A stretch of DNA of 63,804 nucleotides, the filler included, from Octopus bimaculoides (taxonomy: Eukaryota), in NCBI RefSeq assembly GCF_001194135.2. It is 5 parts of 4 records of this genome, joined end to end, with 100 filler letters (N's around TTAATTAATTAA, not from the genome) between each part and the next. Parts side by side here need not be neighbours in the genome. Positions count along the whole stretch, not along the records: positions 1 to 28,174 come from NC_068990.1; 4 more parts are not named here. One strand, 5' to 3'. Below the pieces are notes generated by a model. It did no database searches, was not told where the DNA came from, and was given only the letters and a program-made list of their open reading frames with translations. Shown one piece after another: positions 3,531-22,943 of the stretch (its first letter is position 1; every line of letters starts with the position of its first letter). The translations under genes were made by a program, and so were the position numbers.

Positions 3531-6480
3531 GTGACAATTTTCACCACTTCAGATAAAACTGTGAATAATACTCAAACACAGGGTAATCTAACAACAGGAA
3601 CGAGCCTATCTAAAAGAAAAATTTACAAGAAAGACGGAAGAATTGATAAACAACAGCAAAATCCTTTGAAGCCACAACTCTGGAACGAGCTTTTAAATCA
3701 ACGTAAACATGCATATTGCAAAAGCGTTCGATGTAACAATATAGCCAACACCTACCAAAATTGGCGAAGCAAAGAAAACCCAATCCTTCCCAGAAAATTT
3801 CTTATTAAAAAAATAAGAGGCGAATCACTGGAAGAAATGACGACATGTGCAAACTTAGCTTTATGCCGACTGGAAGCGGAAATTTCTCTTCTTTATTCGC
3901 GAAAGACATGACACGAAGAGAAAGTCAAAACAATTGATGCAGTTATGTTTGTTGAAATCATCGAATGAAGTGACAAAGTGAATGACACTAAGCGGGAAGA
4001 AGACAAATCCATGAAAATGTGGGGAAAACATGAGTGGTTCACTATGAAAAAATAAACTATGGAGAAAAATTCCTTATGAAAACGAAACCATAACAACAAA
4101 AAAATACTAGGAAATCAAAAACAAAGACACTGGCCCCAGAGGAACCAGACTAAGGTATCGAACCTCTAGTTTTCCAAGAACATATACAGAGATGACCTTC
4201 ACCTCACCCCAAATGCCGACTAGAAACCCATACTCTGCAATACCGAAACATAACACTGCAATAAAGAAAGACATGGAATGTAGAAGATAACGTCAACACA
4301 TAATATCAAGCATACCAGATGGATGAACACATGGGGCAAAAGACAGGAAAGACAAGTAACATACAGACAACCGCCAACCCATAGTACCAAGTACCCTAGA
4401 TGGATGAATACATGGAAAGAAAGACAAGTAAAATATGGAAAACACAGAAACCATAATATTAATAATCATAGAAACTCACAATTTACGACCAACAATCCCA
4501 TACATCCTGAATGGCTCAATAAACATAGAAGATGGGAAGAAGGCAGAACCTATAGACAACGAAATGCATACAAAGAACATGAACCATCCCCTCACCTACG
4601 AGGGAACCAGAACCCCAGAAACAACAAAAAATTGGAAACACAATAATACAATTTCTTTTATAGGGAGAAAATACCACAATCGCGCACCAGACCCGACGCA
4701 ATAGAAAACTTTAATGAGCGCGCAGAACGAATAGACCCGAAGATCATAAATTCTTCAAATAGAAACTTCAACAAGAGTGACATGAATCTCCTATTGAAAG
4801 GTTTCAAATTGACACCGACATTCACCCCTAATCTAAAAAGCTGATATTGAGCATTTTAACCACCACCTCCGGCTTATAGAATTCTTCGGCAATAAGGATA
4901 TAAATGATGAATCAATTGTCAGAAATAAATCCCACTTCATGCTCTACAAGATGAATGACAAACATTTAGACACAATTTTGAAAGTTCTCCTGAGTACCCG
5001 TAAATGTAAACAAAACCTTCGTGAAGAAGAAAAGGAAGCCTTACTAACATTGAAGAATGACAATTCAATCATCGTAAAAGAAGCCGGTAAGGGAGGGGTG
5101 ATAGTAATCATGGACAAAGACTACTATAAAGATAAAATATTGGAAATTCTAACTGACCAAACCTACTACAAGGAAGAACCAAGACACCAGGAAAAAGCAA
5201 TAATGAATAAAATCAAAGGAGAAAGATTATTTATGCAACTCTGTAATCAAAGAGAGCAATTTCAACGGGTTACCAAAAATCCACAAAAGCCCTGAAATAC
5301 AGAGAGCCATAAATGAGCAGAGGAAGCAATACATAAAAATACTAAGGCCTACTGACCTCAAACTGAGTCCAATAGTTGCTGTACCTCAAGCACTAACACA
5401 ACAACTGAGTAATTTTGGGGGACATACTCCTAAAACCTTTATGCTCATTAATACCCAGCTATATACTGGACGGCATAGATCTCCAGCACATTCCACCCAC
5501 TGTCCCAGAAGGCACTATGCTTACAAACTTTGATGTCACCAATCTTTGTACCAATATACCTCACACTTTGGGCCTGGAAGCCATCAAGCACTGGGTAGAG
5601 AAACATAGAGGACGGATAACTGAACGCTTCAAAACTGACTTCATCACCAAGGCCACACGCCTGTTACTAGAAAAAACACCTTTAGATTCGGTAATAAAAC
5701 ATATCGACAGATAAAGGGCACGACTTTGTGGACGCGGTTTGCACCCTCATACGTTTACCTAGTCCTGGGATATTTGGAAGAAAAACTTTATGAGAGAAGT
5801 AGAGTAAGCTCTTAATCAGGATTACAAGAAATACATCATTAAAAAGTGGAAACTGCTTCACCTTTTGGGACATGTCAAATGAGGACCTACAAATATTTTA
5901 TGATATACTCAACACACTTCACCCACCCATCAACTTCACGACAGAATCCAGTTGCAATGAATAGCCATTCCTGGATATTCACATAAAAATACACAACAGA
6001 CATATTTTACAAAACAACCGACACGCACCAATATTTGAATTTCTACTCTTGCCATCCCTCACACATCAAAAGCAACATCCTATACAGCATGGCAAGACTT
6101 AACTGCACTAGAGTGATTGACCCACAATACAACAAATCCGACTCAACGAACTCAAAGACTTCCTAACAAAGCAGAAATACCTCCTTAGTCGTAATAAACG
6201 TGTGAATTAAAAAGTCAATGAAGCTGAGCATCGCACAACTAAGGAAAAAATTAATGAACACACGGTTCCATTTATAAACACACACAATCCTGAGGTAGCC
6301 AACATCATAAAATCAAACTTACCTATATTTCTACAAAACCCCAAAATGAAAGATCTGGTTGCTGAAAACCCCTAGACGCTAACCAAAGAATCTCAAAAAA
6401 CACTTCACAGGAGAATGAATCAGAGAATGAATCAGAATTCTCCATAAAAGAATGTGGAGACAGCAGATGTAGGTCCTCAT
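3531..6480 (+). mobile_element. Decayed Penelope-like retroelement (RT, start of C-terminal GIY-YIG linker), Neptune-like by inference
   Basis: Broken frames give NLREEEKEALLTLKNDNSIIVKEAGKGGVIVIMDKDYY (PLE NL..E..AL..L..D..I.I..ADKG), LTNFDVTNLCTNIP (DVxSLYTNIP), QIKGTTLWTRFAPSY (GxAMG motif), KTTDTHQYLNFYSCHPSHIK, and KECGDSRC at ~6447-6470. Many stops and frameshifts. Confidence 0.85.
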
Positions 6481-7823
6481 TTCACTTGTCTCAAAAGATG
6501 AAGCAGTTTCCATAACAACTTTAAATACTTAGAAAGTGTTTCCCACATAAAATTCAAGAGCGGATTCTCGTTCATATATATATGTAAGTATGTATGTATG
6601 TATATGTATGTATGTATATATATACATATATATATATATATNNNNNNNNNNNNNNNNNNNNNNNNNNNNNNNNNNNNNNNNNNNNNNNNNNNNNNNNNNN
6701 NNNNNNNNNNNNNNNNNNNNNNNNNNNNNNNNNNNNNNNNNNNNNNNNNNNNNNNNNNNNNNNNNNNNNNNNNNNNNNNNNNNNNNNNNNNNNNNNNNNN
6801 NNNNNNNNNNNNNNNNNNNNNNNNNNNNNNNNNNNNNNNNNNNNNNNNNNNNNNNNNNNNNNNNNNNNNNNNNNNNNNNNNNNNNNNNNNNNNNNNNNNN
6901 NNNNNNNNNNNNNNNNNNNNNNNNNNNNNNNNNNNNNNNNNNNNNNNNNNNNNNNNNNNNNNNNNNNNNNNNNNNNNNNNNNNNNNNNNNNNNNNNNNNN
7001 NNNNNNNNNNNNNNNNNNNNNNNNNNNNNNNNNNNNNNNNNNNNNNNNNNNNNNNNNNNNNNNNNNNNNNNNNNNNNNNNNNNNNNNNNNNNNNNNNNNN
7101 NNNNNNNNNNNNNNNNNNNNNNNNNNNNNNNNNNNNNNNNNNNNNNNNNNNNNNNNNNNNNNNNNNNNNNNNNNNNNNNNNNNNNNNNNNNNNNNNNNNN
7201 NNNNNNNNNNNNNNNNNNNNNNNNNNNNNNNNNNNNNATATATCAAGAAAATAAGACAAGGTAGAAAATACTAAAATAATTTTATCATGAAATACATTTT
7301 GTAAACGTTAGTACCGGTTTCAGTCTTTTCCACTTTTTCAACTAAGAGTAAAACAAGAAAAACAACTAAATTGAAGAAAATATTAAATGAAATGTGTTGG
7401 AACATATCTCTCTTCACCTCCTGTCTCTATGATTCTTTTTCACTGTGCATATGTAGCGCTGGACAAGCCTTGTATGTGCAATCATACTGCACCTGTTATG
7501 TTAACTCTCTCTCTATCTTTTTTGCAGAGGACAAACAGACAGATACATAGAAGGTAGGTGGGTGGGTGTGATCTTCCGCAATATGAAATCAACGTGCGGA
7601 GTAATTTTATTTTCGATTTCCTTTATAGTCTTTGGATATTGTTTGCTTAATTTTATTTTAATTAATATTTCTTTTGTAGAAAATTAGTATTCATTTCATC
7701 ATTTTTGCATAAATACCATGAAACTTGATAAAAATTTAATTTACAGTTATTGTATTATGCTATATTCCCTGATATTACCCATGATGGGTAAAGCAAGCCT
7801 TCAGTATTTCCCGTAACATTCTA

Positions 7824-15347: not shown

Positions 15348-15548
15348 TATATGGCAAAAAAACTACCGGCCAATAGCATGCCAGAATTTAATGCATAAAA
15401 TATATACAGCATGTTTAAATTTCTTCCTCTAAGACCATTGAGAAAGTAATAACATCATCACAGCAGAACAAGCAGTTGGGAGGAAAGGAGTCTGGGGATA
15501 ACTGAGGAATTGTTAATACACAAAGCAGTAATGTCAGAGATACGGGAG

Positions 15549-16319
15549 TCTTGTGGCGGACACCCCCAAGTGAGAAGCGGGCTATTCCACTACTGATGAA
15601 TAGTGGACAGGCACAACAAGCAGCGTCAGTCGGCGAGGTACGCCGTGCAGGCTAGTCACGCAGACGACGAAATACGTCGTCATAATGCGGGACATATCAG
15701 TGGCGACGAGATTTCGTGCACACGCAATGAAAAATAAATCTTGTTGAAGGAGGAACTGAACTACACACTGTGAAAATTAATATACACGCTGTGAAAAATA
15801 TATAAATTCGATTGAAAAAGATTCTGAAGAAAAAATGTCTGATAAAACTGGAACTCTAACTCAGAACTTGACTACACACAGTGAAAAATAATATAAATCC
15901 GTTCGAAGGATTTTAGTCAGGTCGCTATGTGTTAGTAGCGCTACCGGTAAACAATGTAGACTGGTACTACCTGCGGCATTCTGAAGAGAAAAATAATTCT
16001 GTGTCGAAGAAAAAATAATAATAAGTCCGTGTGAAGGATTTAAGTCAAATCGCTATGTGTTAGTAGCGCTACAGGTAAACAATGTAGACTGGTACTACCT
16101 GCGGCATTCTGAAGAGAAAAATAATTCTGTGTCGAAGAAAAAATAATAATAAGTCCGTGTGAAGGATTTAAGTCAAGTCGCTATGTGTTAGTAGCGCTAC
16201 AGGTAAACAATGAAGACTGGTACTACCTGCGGCATTCGGAAGAGAAAAATAATTCTGTGTAGAAGAAAGCAACAACAACAACAACAACAACAACAATAAT
16301 AATAATAATAATAATAATG

Positions 16320-16401
<82 letters not shown>

Positions 16402-16608
16402 GTTAATGTGAAGGATTTTAGGCAGGTGTGAAAGAAAAAATCTCAAAGGGGAAGAAGTGTTGTGGCGGACACCCCTAAGTGAGAAGTGGGCTGTTCCACT
16501 ACTGATAAATAGTGGACAGACACAGCAAGCAGTGTCAGTCGGTGAGGTACGCCGTTCGGGCCAGTCACGTAGCCGACGAAATACGTCGTCATAATGCGGG
16601 ACATATCA
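15549..16608 (+). mobile_element. Complete miniature non-autonomous LTR retrotransposon (TRIM-like), 1,060 bp
   Basis: 151-bp direct repeats at 15549-15699 and 16458-16608 (3' copy TG...CA). PBS TGGCGACGAG at 15701-15710, polypurine tract aaaggggaagaag at 16445-16457, 5-bp TSD gggag/ggggg. No internal coding capacity. Confidence 0.9.
15905..16430. repeat. 128-bp tandem repeat x3 (plus partial 4th) with an (AAC)n(AAT)n expansion, inside the TRIM
   Basis: Unit starts gaaggatt at 15905, 16033, 16161 and 16410. Confidence 0.9.
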
Positions 16609-19281
16609 GGGGGCATAGGAGAAACCTAGTTTCAATGTGACTAGACAAAAAGAAAGCCTTTGACTCTGTTCCCCACTAATGGATGCTAGAAGCCCTTCGA
16701 GTTACTAAACTTCCAGTGAGCATTGTCAAATCAATAGCTGAGCTGACTTCATCGTGGGCCACCATTTTGAAGTTAAATACAAGGAGTGATTTAATTATCA
16801 TTGATAGAATACAGTATCGCAGATGTGTATTCCAAGGAGACAGCCTCTCTGTGATACTGTTTATACTTTCTATAAACCCCCTTGTCATTCATATTAAGGA
16901 TGTCTGATGAATATCTCACTGGTTCACAAGGAAACAGAAATACCAAAATTACACACTGTTTCTCCGTGGACGACTTGAAACTATAGTCCAAGAATATGCA
17001 TGAAAAGAAAAAGAGTCTTGACCTGGTTACAACATTCTCAAAAGATATAGGATTGACGTTTGGTCAGGATAAATGTCGCTATATGGTTGTGAAAAGAGGG
17101 AAAACTGTAAACTAGACTAGCAACATCTCCATCAATAACTTAACTGTTTCCCCTATATCTGATATGGAATGTTACAGGTACCTAAGGGTGGATGAAAACT
17201 TATCTTATGATGGCACCTGTAACAAGACATGTGTCACTGAGGAATATTACAGCCGAATAAAGAAAATATGGACCTCAGAACTCACTGCTTTCAATAAAAC
17301 AGTGGCTCACAATGTTTGCAGCGCCTGTACTCATGTCGAAATTTGGGCTACTTGATTGGAGGCTTGATGAGATCCGGGCCATTCATATGAAAACCCGGAA
17401 TATACTAACCAGCACAGATAATTTCCACATCAACATCGATGTAGACCTAATTAAAACAATAAATAAGAGGGAAGAAGCTTAACATCGATCCAGAATGCCT
17501 TTGAATGTCGTATTTATATCCCTTCGGCAACATATTTTCACCACCAAGTGCCGAAGTGCGTCTCTTGACCAAGTTTGCATACATGAAGCTGATAACATCA
17601 TAAGACTTGGAAAGCAACACCTTGAGCAGCATTCTTTGTCTGATAACCTTAAATACATGCCCAAAGAAGTCGCACCACTCTACCGCAACGTATCATCGGG
17701 TGAAATGATGACGTATATCACTAGAAGGCCATACATGGATACGTTAGTAGAAAGCTCCGAGATGACAATAACACTGATCATCAAAGCAGTCTATCACGGA
17801 ACAACAACCAGATTACTAACTCCCACTTTGAAGATTATGCGTTTACAATCTAGGAACAGGAAATATCAACCAAATACCTGGTGCACGAAAGGGACAGAGA
17901 TGCAGGAAACACACCAAAATGTGACAACCAATGCAGACTTTGTGGAGTCAACACCGAGGATATTACCTACACCATAAGCAGTTGTCCGAAAATGTCATCA
18001 CAGTATTATCTGCCGATGGGGTATGATGTAGCTAGGACACTGTATAATGAGATCTGTCGGGAGAATAACTTTGAAGCCAAAAAAATAAGAACCCACAGTA
18101 TAGTAGAAGCGATAGCCACTCATAATAAAAAGGAGTACTGGTGGAATGTCCCAGTGAAAATCCCAATAAAATGTGAACACAATAGACCTGATATAATAAT
18201 TTGGGATAGAGAAGAGAGACTGTGTAAGTTGTGGAAATTAGCTGCACAGCAGATGTTAACAAAAAGCTAAAGATCAGCAAAAAGAGAATACTTATGCTTG
18301 AACTATTGAGAAATTTACAGTTACTCTACCCAGATTACAAGTTCAGGTTTATACCTGTAATTATTAGGGCATTAGGATATGTAACACACTGCCTAAATAC
18401 CAATCTTGAGAAATTAGGTTTCTCAAAACCAGAAAGGAGTAAGCAATTCGAAGACTACTCATCCAAGCCATCACTGGAACTATAAAAATCAATAAAACTT
18501 TCAAGAAGTTTATTTAAGTATATATGTGCATGTCTAGACATGCAACTATATGCATGAGAATGCATACATAAAACAAAACATAGAAATCTACACATGCACA
18601 GACTCCAAATACTGCACATATACATACATGCAAAAAAAATCCTGTTGATCTTGAAATTACAATGAAGGAGCCTTGGATCTAAGTTAAATGCCGGCTCTTT
18701 CTCTATTGGCAAGAAATCTTGAAATAAAACTCATTAATTACATACATATATATATATGAATAAAGCAAATAAGTTATAGAGGATCCTTTTATGTAGGTAT
18801 GGCTGATTTTATGGTCATAGTGAAATAGGGGTAGGGAAGAGTATGTGACATTAATTAATTTATCTTTTGAATGTGATAAGGACAAAGATGAATATAGCTA
18901 TATCACTATGCCTCTTTATTGACCCCCATTATTTCCTTCTGCCACTCTAAATTATAGTAGGCTTTAGGTATTTTCCCTAAATTCATTCTCCTACAATAAT
19001 AGCGAAAAGAAGTAATGTATTTTAGTCACTAGTACTGATGAAAAATTTACTAAAAAATTATAATGGCGTATCGTGTATGTTGGAAATCTATATGGTTGTA
19101 CGCATCCGAGGAGAGCAGTTTATTTCAAATTGCATTGCTCGATTAAATGGAGCCGCTTGAAACGGCCGTAATGCACTGGTACCTGACATCCACGTTACTT
19201 ATTTACTTTTTATTCACCTAACTTCGAGCTGGACAGATTTGGTGCCTCAACTTAAGTACCTAATTCAACTGAATCTTATTT

Positions 19282-19373: not shown

Positions 19374-20161
19374 CAGTGAACACTCGTCATACCATACTAA
19401 TAATGAAGAAGTTTACCCGTTTTAATTAATTGTTCAAGTTTGGGTTAATATCTGAGGCATAACTATAATTTAGTGACTGCCTTATAGCTTTCTTAATGAT
19501 TCAAACATGTTAATAAAATTTTATGGTGGTAGATTACAATTATGTTAAAATAACGTTTTAAAAATTGTTTTGATCATTATTTTATTCAGAAGGAAAAGAA
19601 ATCTACATATCTTAGATATTTTTTTAATAACTTGTTTAGGATCATTGCACAGCATAATGATATCAAACAGTGACAGATACAGATTTTGGGCAGTGGAACT
19701 GGGACACTTCAATTCATGCGAGCTTCTCATACGCTAAAATTAAAGAGCACAGCAAAGTCTGTTTATTGCATGTAACTGAAATTGAGTAATAACGCATACA
19801 ACGATAAAATGCAAAAGAACTGATCATTTATAGATGCAAATTGTATAAAAGTACGCATATATGCTAAATATGTTAAATGTTATACATATATGTTAAATGC
19901 TAGAACTGACAAATTAGTGCCAGAGCTGCCATAGAACTTTTAGTAAATACACAAAAAAACACTAACAAAAAATCTAAGAAAAGAAGTAAAAACATAAAAT
20001 ACTAAAGAATACATGAAACTTACCTTAAATTTCTAATCAAACTTGCCTCAGATTCATGAAATTTGACTCTGACAAGAAGGGCGGAGCAAGCTATGGAAAG
20101 GAGGCCCAGAACAAGCACCCCTTTTGCCTCTTATAAATCTGGCTCCAATGTTAGTTAAGGG

Positions 20162-20608
20162 AAGGCAGCGAGCTTGGCAGAATCATTAGCACGCAGGGCA
20201 AAATGCTTAGCGGCATTTCGTCTGTCATTACGTTCTGAGTTCAAATTCCGCCTAGTTCGAGTTTGCCTTTCATCCTTTCGGAGACAATTAAATAAGTACC
20301 AGTTGGACACCGGAGTCGATGTAATCGACTTATGCCTCTTCCGAACTCGCTGACTTTGTGCCAAAGATTGAAACCACTATTAGTTAAGGGAAGGCGGCGA
20401 ACTAGCAGAATCGTTAGTACGCTGGGCAAAATGCTTAGCGACATTTTGTCCGTCTTTACGTTGAGTTCAAATTTTGCCGAGCTTGACTTTGCCTTTCATC
20501 ATTTCGAGGTCGGTAAAATAAGAACCAGTTGAAAACTGGGATCGATGTGATCGATTTACCCCCTCCCCCGAAAGTGCTGGTCTTGTGCCAAAATTTGAAA
20601 CCAATATT
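20162..20608 (+). mobile_element. Two head-to-tail SINE family A copies (20162-20379, 20391-20608)
   Basis: Consensus aaggcggcgagctggcagaa.cgttagcacg...gagttcaaattccgcc...gactttgcctttcatcctttcg..gtcgataaa.taagtaccag, which recurs more than 10 times in the window. Confidence 0.9.
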
Positions 20609-21029
20609 AAGAGAAACAAGGCACATTGCGGGATATTACCATCTGTATGGTGGTAGACAAATTTGCTAATTGCGTCATTACTGAATTCTTCCGATCTGTA
20701 ATGCAGAAGGTGAAGCGTAAATTTCTTCGGCCATACTTTTTGGTTTCATCTTGGTAATGAATAATATAAATCGGTATGCTGTCAAGTTGTTATTTTTTTA
20801 TGTTATGCAGGAATGGTTGAAAGGATACGGAATTATTTTTCTTTCTGAATAACTTTTCTTTCTTTTAAGTTCACCAATAAAATGATCTGCCCCTTCAAAA
20901 ACGTATCGCCGCGAAATTTCATTAAAAAAAAAACTAGGTATTATTAAAAAAAAGTTATGAGGAAATAAAGCTGAAGTGGGCATTAAACTGTAACTAAACA
21001 CACACATACATACGCACACGCACACACAC

Positions 21030-21438: not shown

Positions 21439-21797
21439 AAAGGTAGCGATTGTGGTACACGTGATAGCTTGTCATTAACTGTTACTACACTAGTTCAAAT
21501 TCCACCGGGGCCGACTTTGCCTTTCATCCTTTTAGACTTGATGAAATAAGTTCCAGTTATGCACTGAGGTCGATATAATGATTAACCCCACTCCCCTAAA
21601 AAATTCCAGGCCTTGTGCCTATAGTAGAAAGGAATATTAATTGCTATAAAGAAGGTGACAAATTGGGTAGAATCGTTAGCTCGCCGGACAATATGCATTG
21701 CGGCATTTCTTCCGGTTCTTTACGTTCTGAATTCAAATTCCGTCGAAGTCGACTTTACCTTTCATCTTTTTAGGGTCGATAAAACGAGTACCAGGCT
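21439..21797 (+). mobile_element. Two SINE family A copies (21439-21639 diverged; 21652-21797 truncated by a LINE)
   Basis: Same core gactttgcctttcatc.ttt....gtcgataaa.cgagtaccag. Confidence 0.8.
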
Positions 21798-21799
21798 GG

Positions 21800-22571: not shown

Positions 22572-22943
22572 CTAGCCCATTGTAGCGAATACAAAACTGA
22601 ATTTCTTACCGAACAACCACACAGATGATTTGTTTATAGTGATCAAATGTTTGTATAGACATAATCTCACTCCCTCCATTAGATCGACATTACCTGTACA
22701 GGTGCAACGGGTTGCTACATGTCGAAATGTGTCATGTCGAAATGTGTCATGTCGAAATGATCGCAAAGCAACGTGAAATGAAGTGCTTTGCTCAAGAACA
22801 CAACGTAACGCCCGGTCTGGGAATCGAACCCACGATCTCGGAATCATGAATGCAACACCTTAGCCACTAAGCTACGCGCCNNNNNNNNNNACCCACGATC
22901 TCGGAATCATGAATGCAACACCTTAGCCACTAAGCTACGCGCC
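22572..22943 (-). mobile_element. tRNA-derived SINE (family B-type head), head duplicated across a 10-N gap
   Basis: Minus-strand A box TAGCTTAGTGG and B box GGTTCGATTCC, then core tgtgttcttgagcaaagcactt. 22828-22880 is identical to 22891-22943. Confidence 0.85.

What the first reader, a model, noticed from the sequence alone, without database searches (positions are those of the whole stretch)
15549..16608. Complete TRIM-like miniature LTR retrotransposon with tRNA-Ser primer site, inserted inside a LINE RT
Seen: two 151-bp LTRs (14 differences, 11 of them transitions, ~9%), TGGCGACGAG one base after the 5' LTR, a purine tract abutting the 3' LTR, a 5-bp TSD (gggag/ggggg) and a non-coding interior. 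Removing the element and one TSD restores the host frame ATA CGG GAG CAT AGG AGA AAC CTA (IREHRRNL) just before the RT KAFDSV motif, which confirms the boundaries. Known: TGGCGACGAG is complementary to the 3' end of eukaryotic tRNA-Ser(GCU)+CCA. TRIMs are well known in plants and reported in a few animals, including bivalves. Inference: a non-autonomous family mobilised in trans by a Ser-primed LTR element. I do not know of a cephalopod description, but I cannot search.
Basis: partly seen in the sequence, partly recalled or inferred. Interest (0 to 1): 0.75.

Follow-up and report, generated by a model that had tools for sequence, protein, structure and literature searches.

The report
Miniature LTR retrotransposon inside octopus LINE
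A 1,060-base non-coding "miniature" LTR retrotransposon (two 151-base repeats, a serine-tRNA primer site, a purine tract and a 5-base target duplication) sits inside a decayed LINE reverse-transcriptase gene of an octopus-type genome. It is an ordinary kind of parasitic DNA, although I found no published description of one in cephalopods.

Summary
The LTRs lie at 15549-15699 and 16458-16608. Each is 151 nt, and they differ at 14 sites (11 transitions, 3 transversions) with no indels. TGGCGACGAG lies one base after the 5' LTR and matches the last 10 nt, including CCA, of tRNA-Ser(GCU), checked against the human sequence. A 13-nt all-purine tract abuts the 3' LTR. The flanks read GGGAG and GGGGG.

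An Octopus sinensis copy of the host LINE aligns across the site without a gap only when the element plus one TSD copy is removed. That independently fixes the boundaries and the 5-bp TSD.

The 758-bp interior has no Pfam or Rfam match. It is built of 128-bp tandem units plus a microsatellite.

A second, about 82% similar copy (interior unit, purine tract, LTR, unrelated flank) exists on Logan contigs from two other runs, so this is a family. That contig lacks the 5' half.

Verdict: a real, old (about 14 My) TRIM-like element and a new member of a known kind. Interest is modest.

The parts
15373..15548 (+). Host: 5' part of a decayed, 5'-truncated LINE reverse-transcriptase ORF, upstream of the insertion
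   Evidence: 77% DNA identity to O. sinensis LINE copy L001 9800-9979. The translation ...EQAVGRKGVWG / ITEELLIHKAVMSEIRE aligns to homologous RTs.
15544..15548 (+). Left copy of the 5-bp target-site duplication (GGGAG)
   Evidence: The empty site in L001 reads GAGAG once.
15549..15699 (+). 5' LTR, 151 nt, TC...CA (TG mutated to TC)
   Evidence: Direct repeat family D3. Gapless alignment to the 3' LTR with 14 differences. 80% identity to the LTR on Logan contig L003.
15701..15710 (+). Primer-binding site TGGCGACGAG, one base after the 5' LTR
   Evidence: Reverse complement of the last 10 nt (...CTCGTCGCCA) of tRNA-Ser-GCT-1-1 as printed in PMC10359600. Rough chance estimate about 3e-4.
15711..15883 (+). 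A-rich leader with degenerate copies of the motif found at the unit boundaries
   Evidence: Repeat families D5 and D6. Local alignment to the 128-bp unit scores 27 against 18 +/- 2.9 in shuffles, with 4 of 500 shuffles reaching it.
15884..16268 (+). Three tandem 128-bp units. Units 2 and 3 are 96.9% alike; unit 1 is 90-91% like them.
   Evidence: TRF period 128, 3.0 copies, score 693. Pairwise identities. 81-83% identity to units on L003.
16270..16401 (+). (CAA)9(AAT)36 microsatellite expanded inside a fourth, partial unit
   Evidence: TRF. The following 16402-16444 resembles the start of a unit.
16445..16457 (+). Polypurine tract AAAGGGGAAGAAG abutting the 3' LTR
   Evidence: 13 of 13 purines. 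The homologous purine-rich stretch lies in the same position on L003.
16458..16608 (+). 3' LTR, 151 nt, TG...CA
   Evidence: 83.6% identity to the L003 LTR.
16609..16613 (+). Right copy of the target-site duplication (GGGGG)
16614..18748 (+). Host: rest of the decayed LINE (RT core KAFDSV onward, with stops and frameshifts, then the C-terminal region)
   Evidence: Pfam RVT_1 E=4.5e-14 on the stitched translation. 75-82% DNA identity to L001 9979-11478. Best named homologue is O. sinensis LOC115227337.

Best explanation
This is one old insertion of a non-autonomous, TRIM-like LTR retrotransposon.

**Inferred life cycle.** An RNA runs from the 5' LTR to the 3' LTR. It is packaged by Gag and copied by the RT of a related autonomous LTR element. 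Minus-strand synthesis is primed by the 3' end of tRNA-Ser(GCU) annealed to TGGCGACGAG. Plus-strand synthesis is primed from the purine tract. The partner's integrase then inserts the double-stranded copy through its TG...CA ends and makes a 5-bp staggered cut.

**At this locus.** The element landed in the same orientation inside an already resident LINE RT sequence. Since then the two LTRs have diverged by 9.3%. Using the octopus calibration quoted in PMC13282606, this is roughly 14 My. The interior has also grown since insertion, by one extra 128-bp unit and a microsatellite. The element was about 800 bp when it inserted.

**What is shown.** The structure, the boundaries, the TSD, the absence of coding capacity, and a second related copy at another locus.

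**What is inferred.** Trans-mobilisation, the identity of the primer tRNA in the host species, and the superfamily of the partner. Ty3/gypsy or Copia is most likely, because BEL/Pao, DIRS and Ngaro appear almost absent in cephalopods (PMC10294476).
For: - **LTR pair.** 151 nt each, 90.7% identical, no indels, and found only at these two places in the window.
- **PBS.** It sits one base after the 5' LTR and equals the complement of the tRNA-Ser-GCT 3' end including CCA.
- **PPT.** A 13-nt all-purine tract abuts the 3' LTR and is conserved in position in the second copy.
- **TSD and boundaries.** An O. sinensis paralogous LINE copy gives a gapless alignment only after removing 15549-16613. Nine RT homologues give the same result.
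- **No protein or structured-RNA signal.** Pfam on six frames found nothing. Rfam at E<=10 gave only two chance-level hits. ARAGORN found nothing.
- **Second copy.** Logan contigs L003 and L004 come from SRR11869385 and SRR11869384. They carry at least 1.4 interior units, a purine tract and an LTR at 80-84% identity. These are followed by an unrelated flank whose end matches an O. sinensis repeat.
- **Homogeneous interior.** The leader just after the PBS resembles the end of the unit (families D5 and D6). This argues against a junction of two unrelated regions.
- **Precedent for serine priming.** Ser-primed Ty3/gypsy lineages are known: the 17.6 group (PMC3383448) and insect errantivirus clades (PMC13524379).
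Against: - Only one complete copy was seen.
- The second copy starts inside the interior. Its 5' LTR, PBS and total length are unknown, and its TSD cannot be checked. Its LTR 3' end (..GGACGTAGAA) has also diverged from ..GGGACATATCA.
- The PBS match is only 10 nt. The 11th base is A where human tRNA-Ser-GCT predicts G. No cephalopod tRNA-Ser gene could be retrieved.
- No autonomous partner was found, and none could be searched for.
- At 1,060 bp the present copy slightly exceeds the classical limit of under 1,000 bp.
- The TSD copies match at 4 of 5 positions.
Confidence: 0.72

Rival explanations
1. A full-length autonomous LTR retrotransposon inserted here and later lost gag-pol through an internal deletion at this locus. 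The 128-bp repeats would be the partner's own untranslated region next to the PPT. The Logan contig would be the 3' end of an ordinary full-length copy.
For: Only one complete miniature copy is documented. L003 covers just the last ~290 bp of interior, the LTR and the flank, so it could belong to a long element. Part of the interior expanded after insertion, so the locus has been rearranged.
Against: No trace of gag, pol or env appears in any frame. The interior is one repetitive domain from PBS to PPT, and the motif at the end of the unit recurs just after the PBS. The 151-nt LTRs are in the TRIM size range (100-250 bp, PMC6934838) and are short for an autonomous Ty3/gypsy or Copia element. 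A deletion would have had to spare both the PBS and the PPT.
Confidence: 0.2
2. A TRIM of the Pol III type (Cassandra, Helenus or Ajax, collectively 'TRIMp3'), or a retrozyme. Its LTRs would carry a tRNA- or 5S-derived promoter or a hammerhead ribozyme.
For: Helenus occurs in molluscs (bivalves) according to PMC10886601. The size is within the Helenus range of 311-1263 bp.
Against: ARAGORN finds no tRNA-like sequence. Rfam finds no tRNA, 5S or hammerhead hit, at gathering threshold or at E<=10 on the element. The nearest box-B-like string in the 3' LTR has 3 mismatches by my own reading, and it is not conserved in the 5' LTR or in L003. Animal Helenus make 4-bp TSDs (PMC10886601); this element has 5 bp.
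Confidence: 0.04
3. Not a mobile element. Either it is a local segmental duplication or chance direct repeat, or it is two independent insertions of a 151-bp repeat that happen to bracket a tandem array.
For: None beyond the general repeat richness of the window.
Against: Removing exactly LTR-to-LTR plus 5 bp restores a continuous LINE sequence. The PBS and PPT sit exactly at the inner LTR edges. The same combination of LTR, purine tract and interior unit occurs at an unrelated locus.
Confidence: 0.02

Closest known systems
Classical TRIMs: plant TRIMs, and the animal TRIMs PbTRIM of ants and the taeniid cestode TRIM (as summarised in PMC6934838, PMC3532108, PMC4558846, PMC10886601)
   Same: Two short terminal direct repeats (100-250 bp), a PBS just after the 5' repeat, a PPT just before the 3' repeat, no coding capacity, a 5-bp TSD, and presumed dependence on an autonomous LTR element.
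   Different: The reports describe no overall sequence similarity between TRIM lineages, and I could not compare sequences here. The present copy is 1,060 bp, just over the classical 1-kb limit, because of a tandem-unit duplication and a microsatellite. The host is a cephalopod, for which I found no TRIM report.
biv-TRIM of bivalve molluscs (PMC6934838)
   Same: A mollusc host, miniature LTR-element architecture, and low abundance.
   Different: biv-TRIM has no canonical PBS and carries a conserved TGATCCCAAAGGAC segment. This element has a canonical tRNA-Ser PBS and lacks that segment.
Helenus, Ajax and Cassandra ('TRIMp3', PMC10886601)
   Same: Short non-autonomous LTR elements with a PBS and PPT. 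Helenus is present in Mollusca (bivalves).
   Different: There is no small-RNA-derived sequence in the LTRs. The TSD is 5 bp, against 4 bp for animal Helenus.
Ser-primed Ty3/gypsy elements: the Drosophila 17.6 group and insect errantivirus clades (PMC3383448, PMC13524379)
   Same: A PBS complementary to a tRNA-Ser. These are candidates for the kind of partner that could mobilise the element.
   Different: They are autonomous elements of several kb. The papers read here do not say which serine isoacceptor they use. From my own knowledge (not tested), the 17.6 group makes 4-bp TSDs, not 5. No sequence link to this element was or could be tested.

Membership tests
TRIM (terminal-repeat retrotransposon in miniature) | Two terminal direct repeats of about 100-250 bp | tested here: met
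   151 nt each, 137 of 151 identical, no gaps.
TRIM (terminal-repeat retrotransposon in miniature) | PBS complementary to a tRNA immediately downstream of the 5' repeat | tested here: met
   TGGCGACGAG at +2 from the LTR end equals the complement of the last 10 nt of tRNA-Ser-GCT-1-1 including CCA. The reference tRNA is human. The host tRNA was not available.
TRIM (terminal-repeat retrotransposon in miniature) | Polypurine tract immediately upstream of the 3' repeat | tested here: met
   AAAGGGGAAGAAG at 16445-16457, 13 of 13 purines, conserved in position on L003.
TRIM (terminal-repeat retrotransposon in miniature) | No coding capacity for Gag or Pol | tested here: met
   No Pfam family at E<=1 in six stop-masked frames. 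ORFs are 57 aa or shorter, apart from one microsatellite poly-Leu ORF.
TRIM (terminal-repeat retrotransposon in miniature) | Total length under about 1,000 bp | tested here: inconclusive
   It is 1,060 bp now. It is about 800 bp without the youngest 128-bp unit and the 132-bp microsatellite. From my own knowledge, it is well under the 4-kb TRIM/LARD cut-off of the Wicker classification.
TRIM (terminal-repeat retrotransposon in miniature) | Target-site duplication made by an LTR-type integrase, with TG...CA ends | tested here: met
   GGGAG/GGGGG (4 of 5). The 5-bp size is confirmed by the empty paralogous site in O. sinensis. The 3' LTR is TG...CA; the 5' LTR is TC...CA.
TRIM (terminal-repeat retrotransposon in miniature) | A family of several copies at independent loci, each with its own TSD | tested here: inconclusive
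   One further, partial copy with a different flank was found on Logan contigs L003 and L004. Its 5' end and TSD are not covered. No cephalopod genome could be searched.
TRIM (terminal-repeat retrotransposon in miniature) | An autonomous partner sharing LTR ends and PBS | not testable with these tools
   There is no searchable cephalopod DNA collection. LTR and interior patterns gave 0 hits in the viral, metagenome and prokaryote collections.
TRIMp3 (Cassandra / Helenus / Ajax) | tRNA- or 5S-rRNA-derived sequence (Pol III promoter) inside the LTR | tested here: not met
   ARAGORN found 0 genes. Rfam gave no tRNA or 5S hit, even at E<=10.
Retrozyme | Hammerhead ribozyme in the terminal repeats | tested here: not met
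   No hammerhead family among the Rfam hits at E<=10 on 15500-16660.
biv-TRIM | Conserved inner-domain segment TGATCCCAAAGGAC and no canonical PBS | tested here: not met
   The motif is absent from the element at up to 3 mismatches. A canonical PBS is present.
LARD | Non-coding LTR element longer than about 4 kb | tested here: not met
   The element is 1,060 bp.

The most novel reading that the evidence does not exclude
This could be the first cephalopod TRIM family, and the first mollusc TRIM with a canonical PBS (tRNA-Ser-GCU). It may be widespread across octopods, with a still identifiable Ser-primed autonomous partner. Its CpG-rich LTRs and expandable 128-bp internal array might seed satellite DNA or act as regulatory or lncRNA modules in octopus genomes.
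Probability: 0.12. Interest if true: 0.5.

Novelty: new member of a known kind. Interest (0 to 1): 0.3.

Why it matters
It adds cephalopods to the short list of animal groups with TRIM-type elements. Those reported so far are hymenopterans, cestodes and bivalves, plus Helenus in six phyla.

Unlike the bivalve TRIM, it has a clean PBS. That gives a direct handle (LTR ends plus the Ser PBS) for finding its autonomous partner. It would also improve the unclassified "other LTR" and "unknown" part of octopus repeat libraries.

Beyond annotation and TE natural history, the consequences are modest. The mechanism is the textbook one.

Tried and rejected
- The look-up of sequencing runs and read laying were both closed. 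I obtained no read depth, no presence/absence polymorphism and no RNA evidence.
- **Word-indexed protein search.** The antisense 57-aa LTR ORF found nothing.
- **Exhaustive HMMER search.** It found one true relative, P0124. The other five hits (P0121-P0123, P0125, P0126) are low-complexity repeat proteins and were rejected. Searching again with P0124 returned only P0124 itself.
- **Exact look-up.** A window LINE ORF was not on record.
- **DNA pattern scans.** LTR and interior patterns gave 0 hits in viral contigs, metagenome contigs and genome contigs.
- **Fetched loci.** L001, L002, L005 and L006 hold no copy of the element. The ENA and TARA contigs are only distantly related.
- **tRNA genes.** None was found in the window or the loci, so the host tRNA-Ser could not be checked.
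- **Literature.** The PBS string returned only PCR-primer coincidences. The run accessions returned nothing relevant.
- **Possible tandem LTR array on L003.** I tested whether the sequence after the L003 LTR is a second PBS and leader. The alignment score was no better than shuffles, so I rejected this.
- **Window Pfam scan.** No LTR-retrotransposon pol fragment turned up that could have served as a partner query.
- **Autonomous retroelement query.** I did not type in any protein sequence of an autonomous retroelement from memory.

Full report
**Observation**

The window holds a direct repeat pair at 15549-15699 and 16458-16608. Both arms are 151 nt and align without gaps. They differ at 14 sites, 11 transitions and 3 transversions, which gives a p-distance of 0.093 and a K2P distance of 0.10. 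Four of the transitions lie at CpG sites. Probes from either end of the repeat hit only these two places in the 28 kb, where shuffles expect none.

The 3' copy starts TG and ends CA. The 5' copy starts TC. The copy found elsewhere (L003) also starts TG, so TC is a later substitution.

- One base after the 5' repeat lies TGGCGACGAG (15701-15710).
- Directly before the 3' repeat lies the all-purine AAAGGGGAAGAAG (16445-16457).
- The flanks read GGGAG (15544-15548) and GGGGG (16609-16613).

**Boundaries, tested independently**

The surrounding sequence is a decayed LINE. The stitched translation hits Pfam RVT_1 at E=4.5e-14. It has 295 RT homologues, and the best named one is Octopus sinensis LOC115227337 at 57% identity.

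I fetched the DNA of that O. sinensis copy as L001. It aligns to both flanks:

- window 15373-15548 matches L001 9800-9979 at 77%;
- window 16613-16736 matches L001 9979-10102 at 82%.

The paralogous empty site reads ...GTGCGAGAG|CATAGGG.... Removing 15549-16613 (the element plus one TSD copy) gives a gapless alignment. Keeping both TSD copies forces a 5-nt gap.

At protein level, the excised frame ...SEIRE|HRRNLVSM.LDKKKAFDSVPH aligns column for column with nine homologous RTs.

So this is a precise insertion with a 5-bp target duplication. A chance repeat or a local duplication is excluded.

**The inside**

The 758-bp interior is 32% G+C, against 55% in the LTRs. It consists of:

- an A-rich leader with degenerate motif copies (15711-15883; families D5 and D6);
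- three tandem 128-bp units (15884-16268; TRF score 693);
- a (CAA)9(AAT)36 microsatellite (16270-16401);
- a partial fourth unit running into the purine tract.

Units 2 and 3 are 96.9% alike, while unit 1 is 90-91% like them. The last duplication, and probably the microsatellite, are therefore younger than the insertion. The element was about 800 bp when it arrived.

None of the six stop-masked frames hits any Pfam family at E<=1. There is no tRNA and no Rfam family at gathering score. At E<=10 only two chance-level hits appear, and neither is a tRNA, 5S or hammerhead. The conserved biv-TRIM segment is absent.

The stretch just after the PBS resembles the end of the unit. The alignment scores 27 against 18 +/- 2.9 in shuffles, and 4 of 500 shuffles reach it. 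The interior therefore looks like one repetitive domain, not two unrelated remnants joined by a deletion.

**Primer site**

A published table prints human tRNA-Ser-GCT-1-1 ending ...CCCACCCTCGTCGCCA (PMC10359600). Its last 10 nt are the exact complement of the PBS. The other serine isoacceptors in that table end ...GACTACGCCA or ...CACAGCGCCA and do not match.

A rough chance estimate for a 10-mer match to any of about 50 tRNA ends within 6 offsets is 3e-4.

There are three limits. The reference tRNA is human. The 11th base does not match. No cephalopod tRNA gene was within reach.

**A second copy**

The word-indexed protein search with the antisense LTR ORF found nothing. The exhaustive HMMER search of 1.84 billion representatives found P0124, a 153-aa ORF that is 74% identical over 35 aa. 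The other five hits are low-complexity repeat proteins.

P0124 lies on two identical Logan contigs of about 1.07 kb, from SRR11869385 and SRR11869384 (L003 and L004). Read in the element's orientation, the contig carries:

- at least 1.4 units that are 81-83% identical to the 128-bp unit;
- a purine-rich tract in the same position;
- an LTR that is 80-84% identical to the window's LTRs;
- about 600 bp of unrelated flank.

The flank is not a PBS and leader. Its far end matches a repeat in the O. sinensis locus at 80.5%, so the source is very probably a cephalopod.

The combination of LTR, purine tract and interior unit therefore exists at a second, independent locus, so this is a family. However, the contig begins inside the interior. 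It cannot show whether that copy is miniature or what its TSD is.

**Mechanism**

The shown steps are the anatomy of an LTR-integrase insertion that lacks any gene. The inferred steps are as follows:

- The element's RNA was copied by the RT of an autonomous LTR retrotransposon, primed by tRNA-Ser(GCU) at the PBS and from the purine tract.
- The partner's integrase inserted the copy with a 5-bp stagger.

In cephalopods Gypsy and Copia are the common LTR superfamilies, and BEL/Pao, DIRS and Ngaro appear almost absent (PMC10294476). Ser-primed Ty3/gypsy lineages are well known in insects (PMC3383448, PMC13524379). Animal Helenus, thought to depend on Gypsy, make 4-bp TSDs (PMC10886601). The 5-bp TSD here leaves the partner's superfamily open.

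**Age**

PMC13282606, quoting Albertin et al. 2015, equates a Jukes-Cantor distance of 0.09 with 25 My in octopus. This is about 3.6e-9 substitutions per site per year. An LTR-LTR distance of 0.10 then gives roughly 14 My. This is a rough figure and is inflated by CpG decay.

**Rivals**

The main rival is a full-length element that later lost its genes by deletion at this locus. I give it about 0.2. It is weakened by four points: the complete lack of coding remnants, the homogeneous interior, the short LTRs, and the intact PBS and PPT. It cannot be excluded without further complete copies.

A Pol III-type TRIM or a retrozyme was tested and the defining features were not met. A non-mobile origin is refuted by the empty site.

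**Comparison and novelty**

The element meets the TRIM criteria except for two. Its length is 1,060 bp now, against the classical limit of under 1,000. The multi-copy criterion is only partly shown.

It differs from biv-TRIM, which has no canonical PBS (PMC6934838). It differs from Helenus, Ajax and Cassandra, which carry small-RNA-derived LTR sequences.

Full-text searches found TRIM reports for plants, ants, cestodes and bivalves, and Helenus in six phyla with only bivalves among molluscs. None concerned cephalopods, including the 2026 curated O. vulgaris repeat annotation. Automated libraries may still hold it as unclassified LTR. I rate it a new member of a known kind, of modest interest.

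**Limits**

No cephalopod genome collection, Dfam or Repbase was available. Copy number, independent TSDs, the partner element, the host tRNA and expression remain untested.

Noticed in passing
window 20145-20609 and 21492-21799: A 226-bp unit repeated twice, plus further fragments. It has a tRNA-like tail (..GTTCAAATTCCGCCGAG..) and is 70-83% identical to repeats in the O. sinensis locus L001 (5495-5913, 16468-16835). It is probably the abundant octopus SINE, here in tandem.
   Followed up: partly
window 25972-26628: ORFs of a decayed mariner-type transposase (Pfam Transposase_1 E=5.8e-8 and DDE_3), interrupted by a 10-N gap at 25825-25834 just upstream.
   Followed up: partly
window 15549-15699 and 16458-16608: The LTRs are a CpG-rich island in AT-rich surroundings. 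They have 55% G+C and CpG observed/expected of 1.05-1.14, against 36% and 0.76 for the window. Four of the 11 LTR transitions are at CpG sites.
   Followed up: partly
window 15592-15611 / 16501-16520, and the matching part of the L003 LTR: An LTR hairpin (CCACTA...TAGTGG) is kept in the diverged copy through a change on both sides (C:G to U:A). A second hairpin (CGACG-AAATA-CGTCG) is kept through G:U wobbles. With only three sequences this is anecdotal.
   Followed up: partly
window 17881-18270: The host LINE's C-terminal ORF has a CxxC...H...C knuckle followed by RPDIIIWD and no Pfam match. The related ENA locus L002 shows no Pfam hit on the ORF upstream of its RT. This suggests a LINE with a restriction-like endonuclease (Dong/R4- or Hero-like), clades reported as typical of cephalopods (PMC10294476, PMC13282606). 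I did not test this further.
   Followed up: no
window 4939-5714: Two adjacent ORFs (118 and 99 aa..KEAGKGGVIVIMDKDYY..) look like part of another retroelement protein but have no Pfam hit.
   Followed up: no
window 16140-16401: The youngest 128-bp unit (96.9% like its neighbour) and the 132-bp (CAA)9(AAT)36 tract show that the element's interior kept expanding after insertion. This is a small example of a tandem array growing inside a TE.
   Followed up: yes
L003 581-1042 (P0124): The 153-aa 'protein' in the public ORF collection is an antisense read-through of the LTR, purine tract and interior of this element family. It is not a real gene.
   Followed up: yes
window 6642-7237, 22881-22890, 25825-25834: Runs of N (596, 10 and 10 bases) are scaffold gaps. 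The piece comes from a gapped assembly.
   Followed up: no
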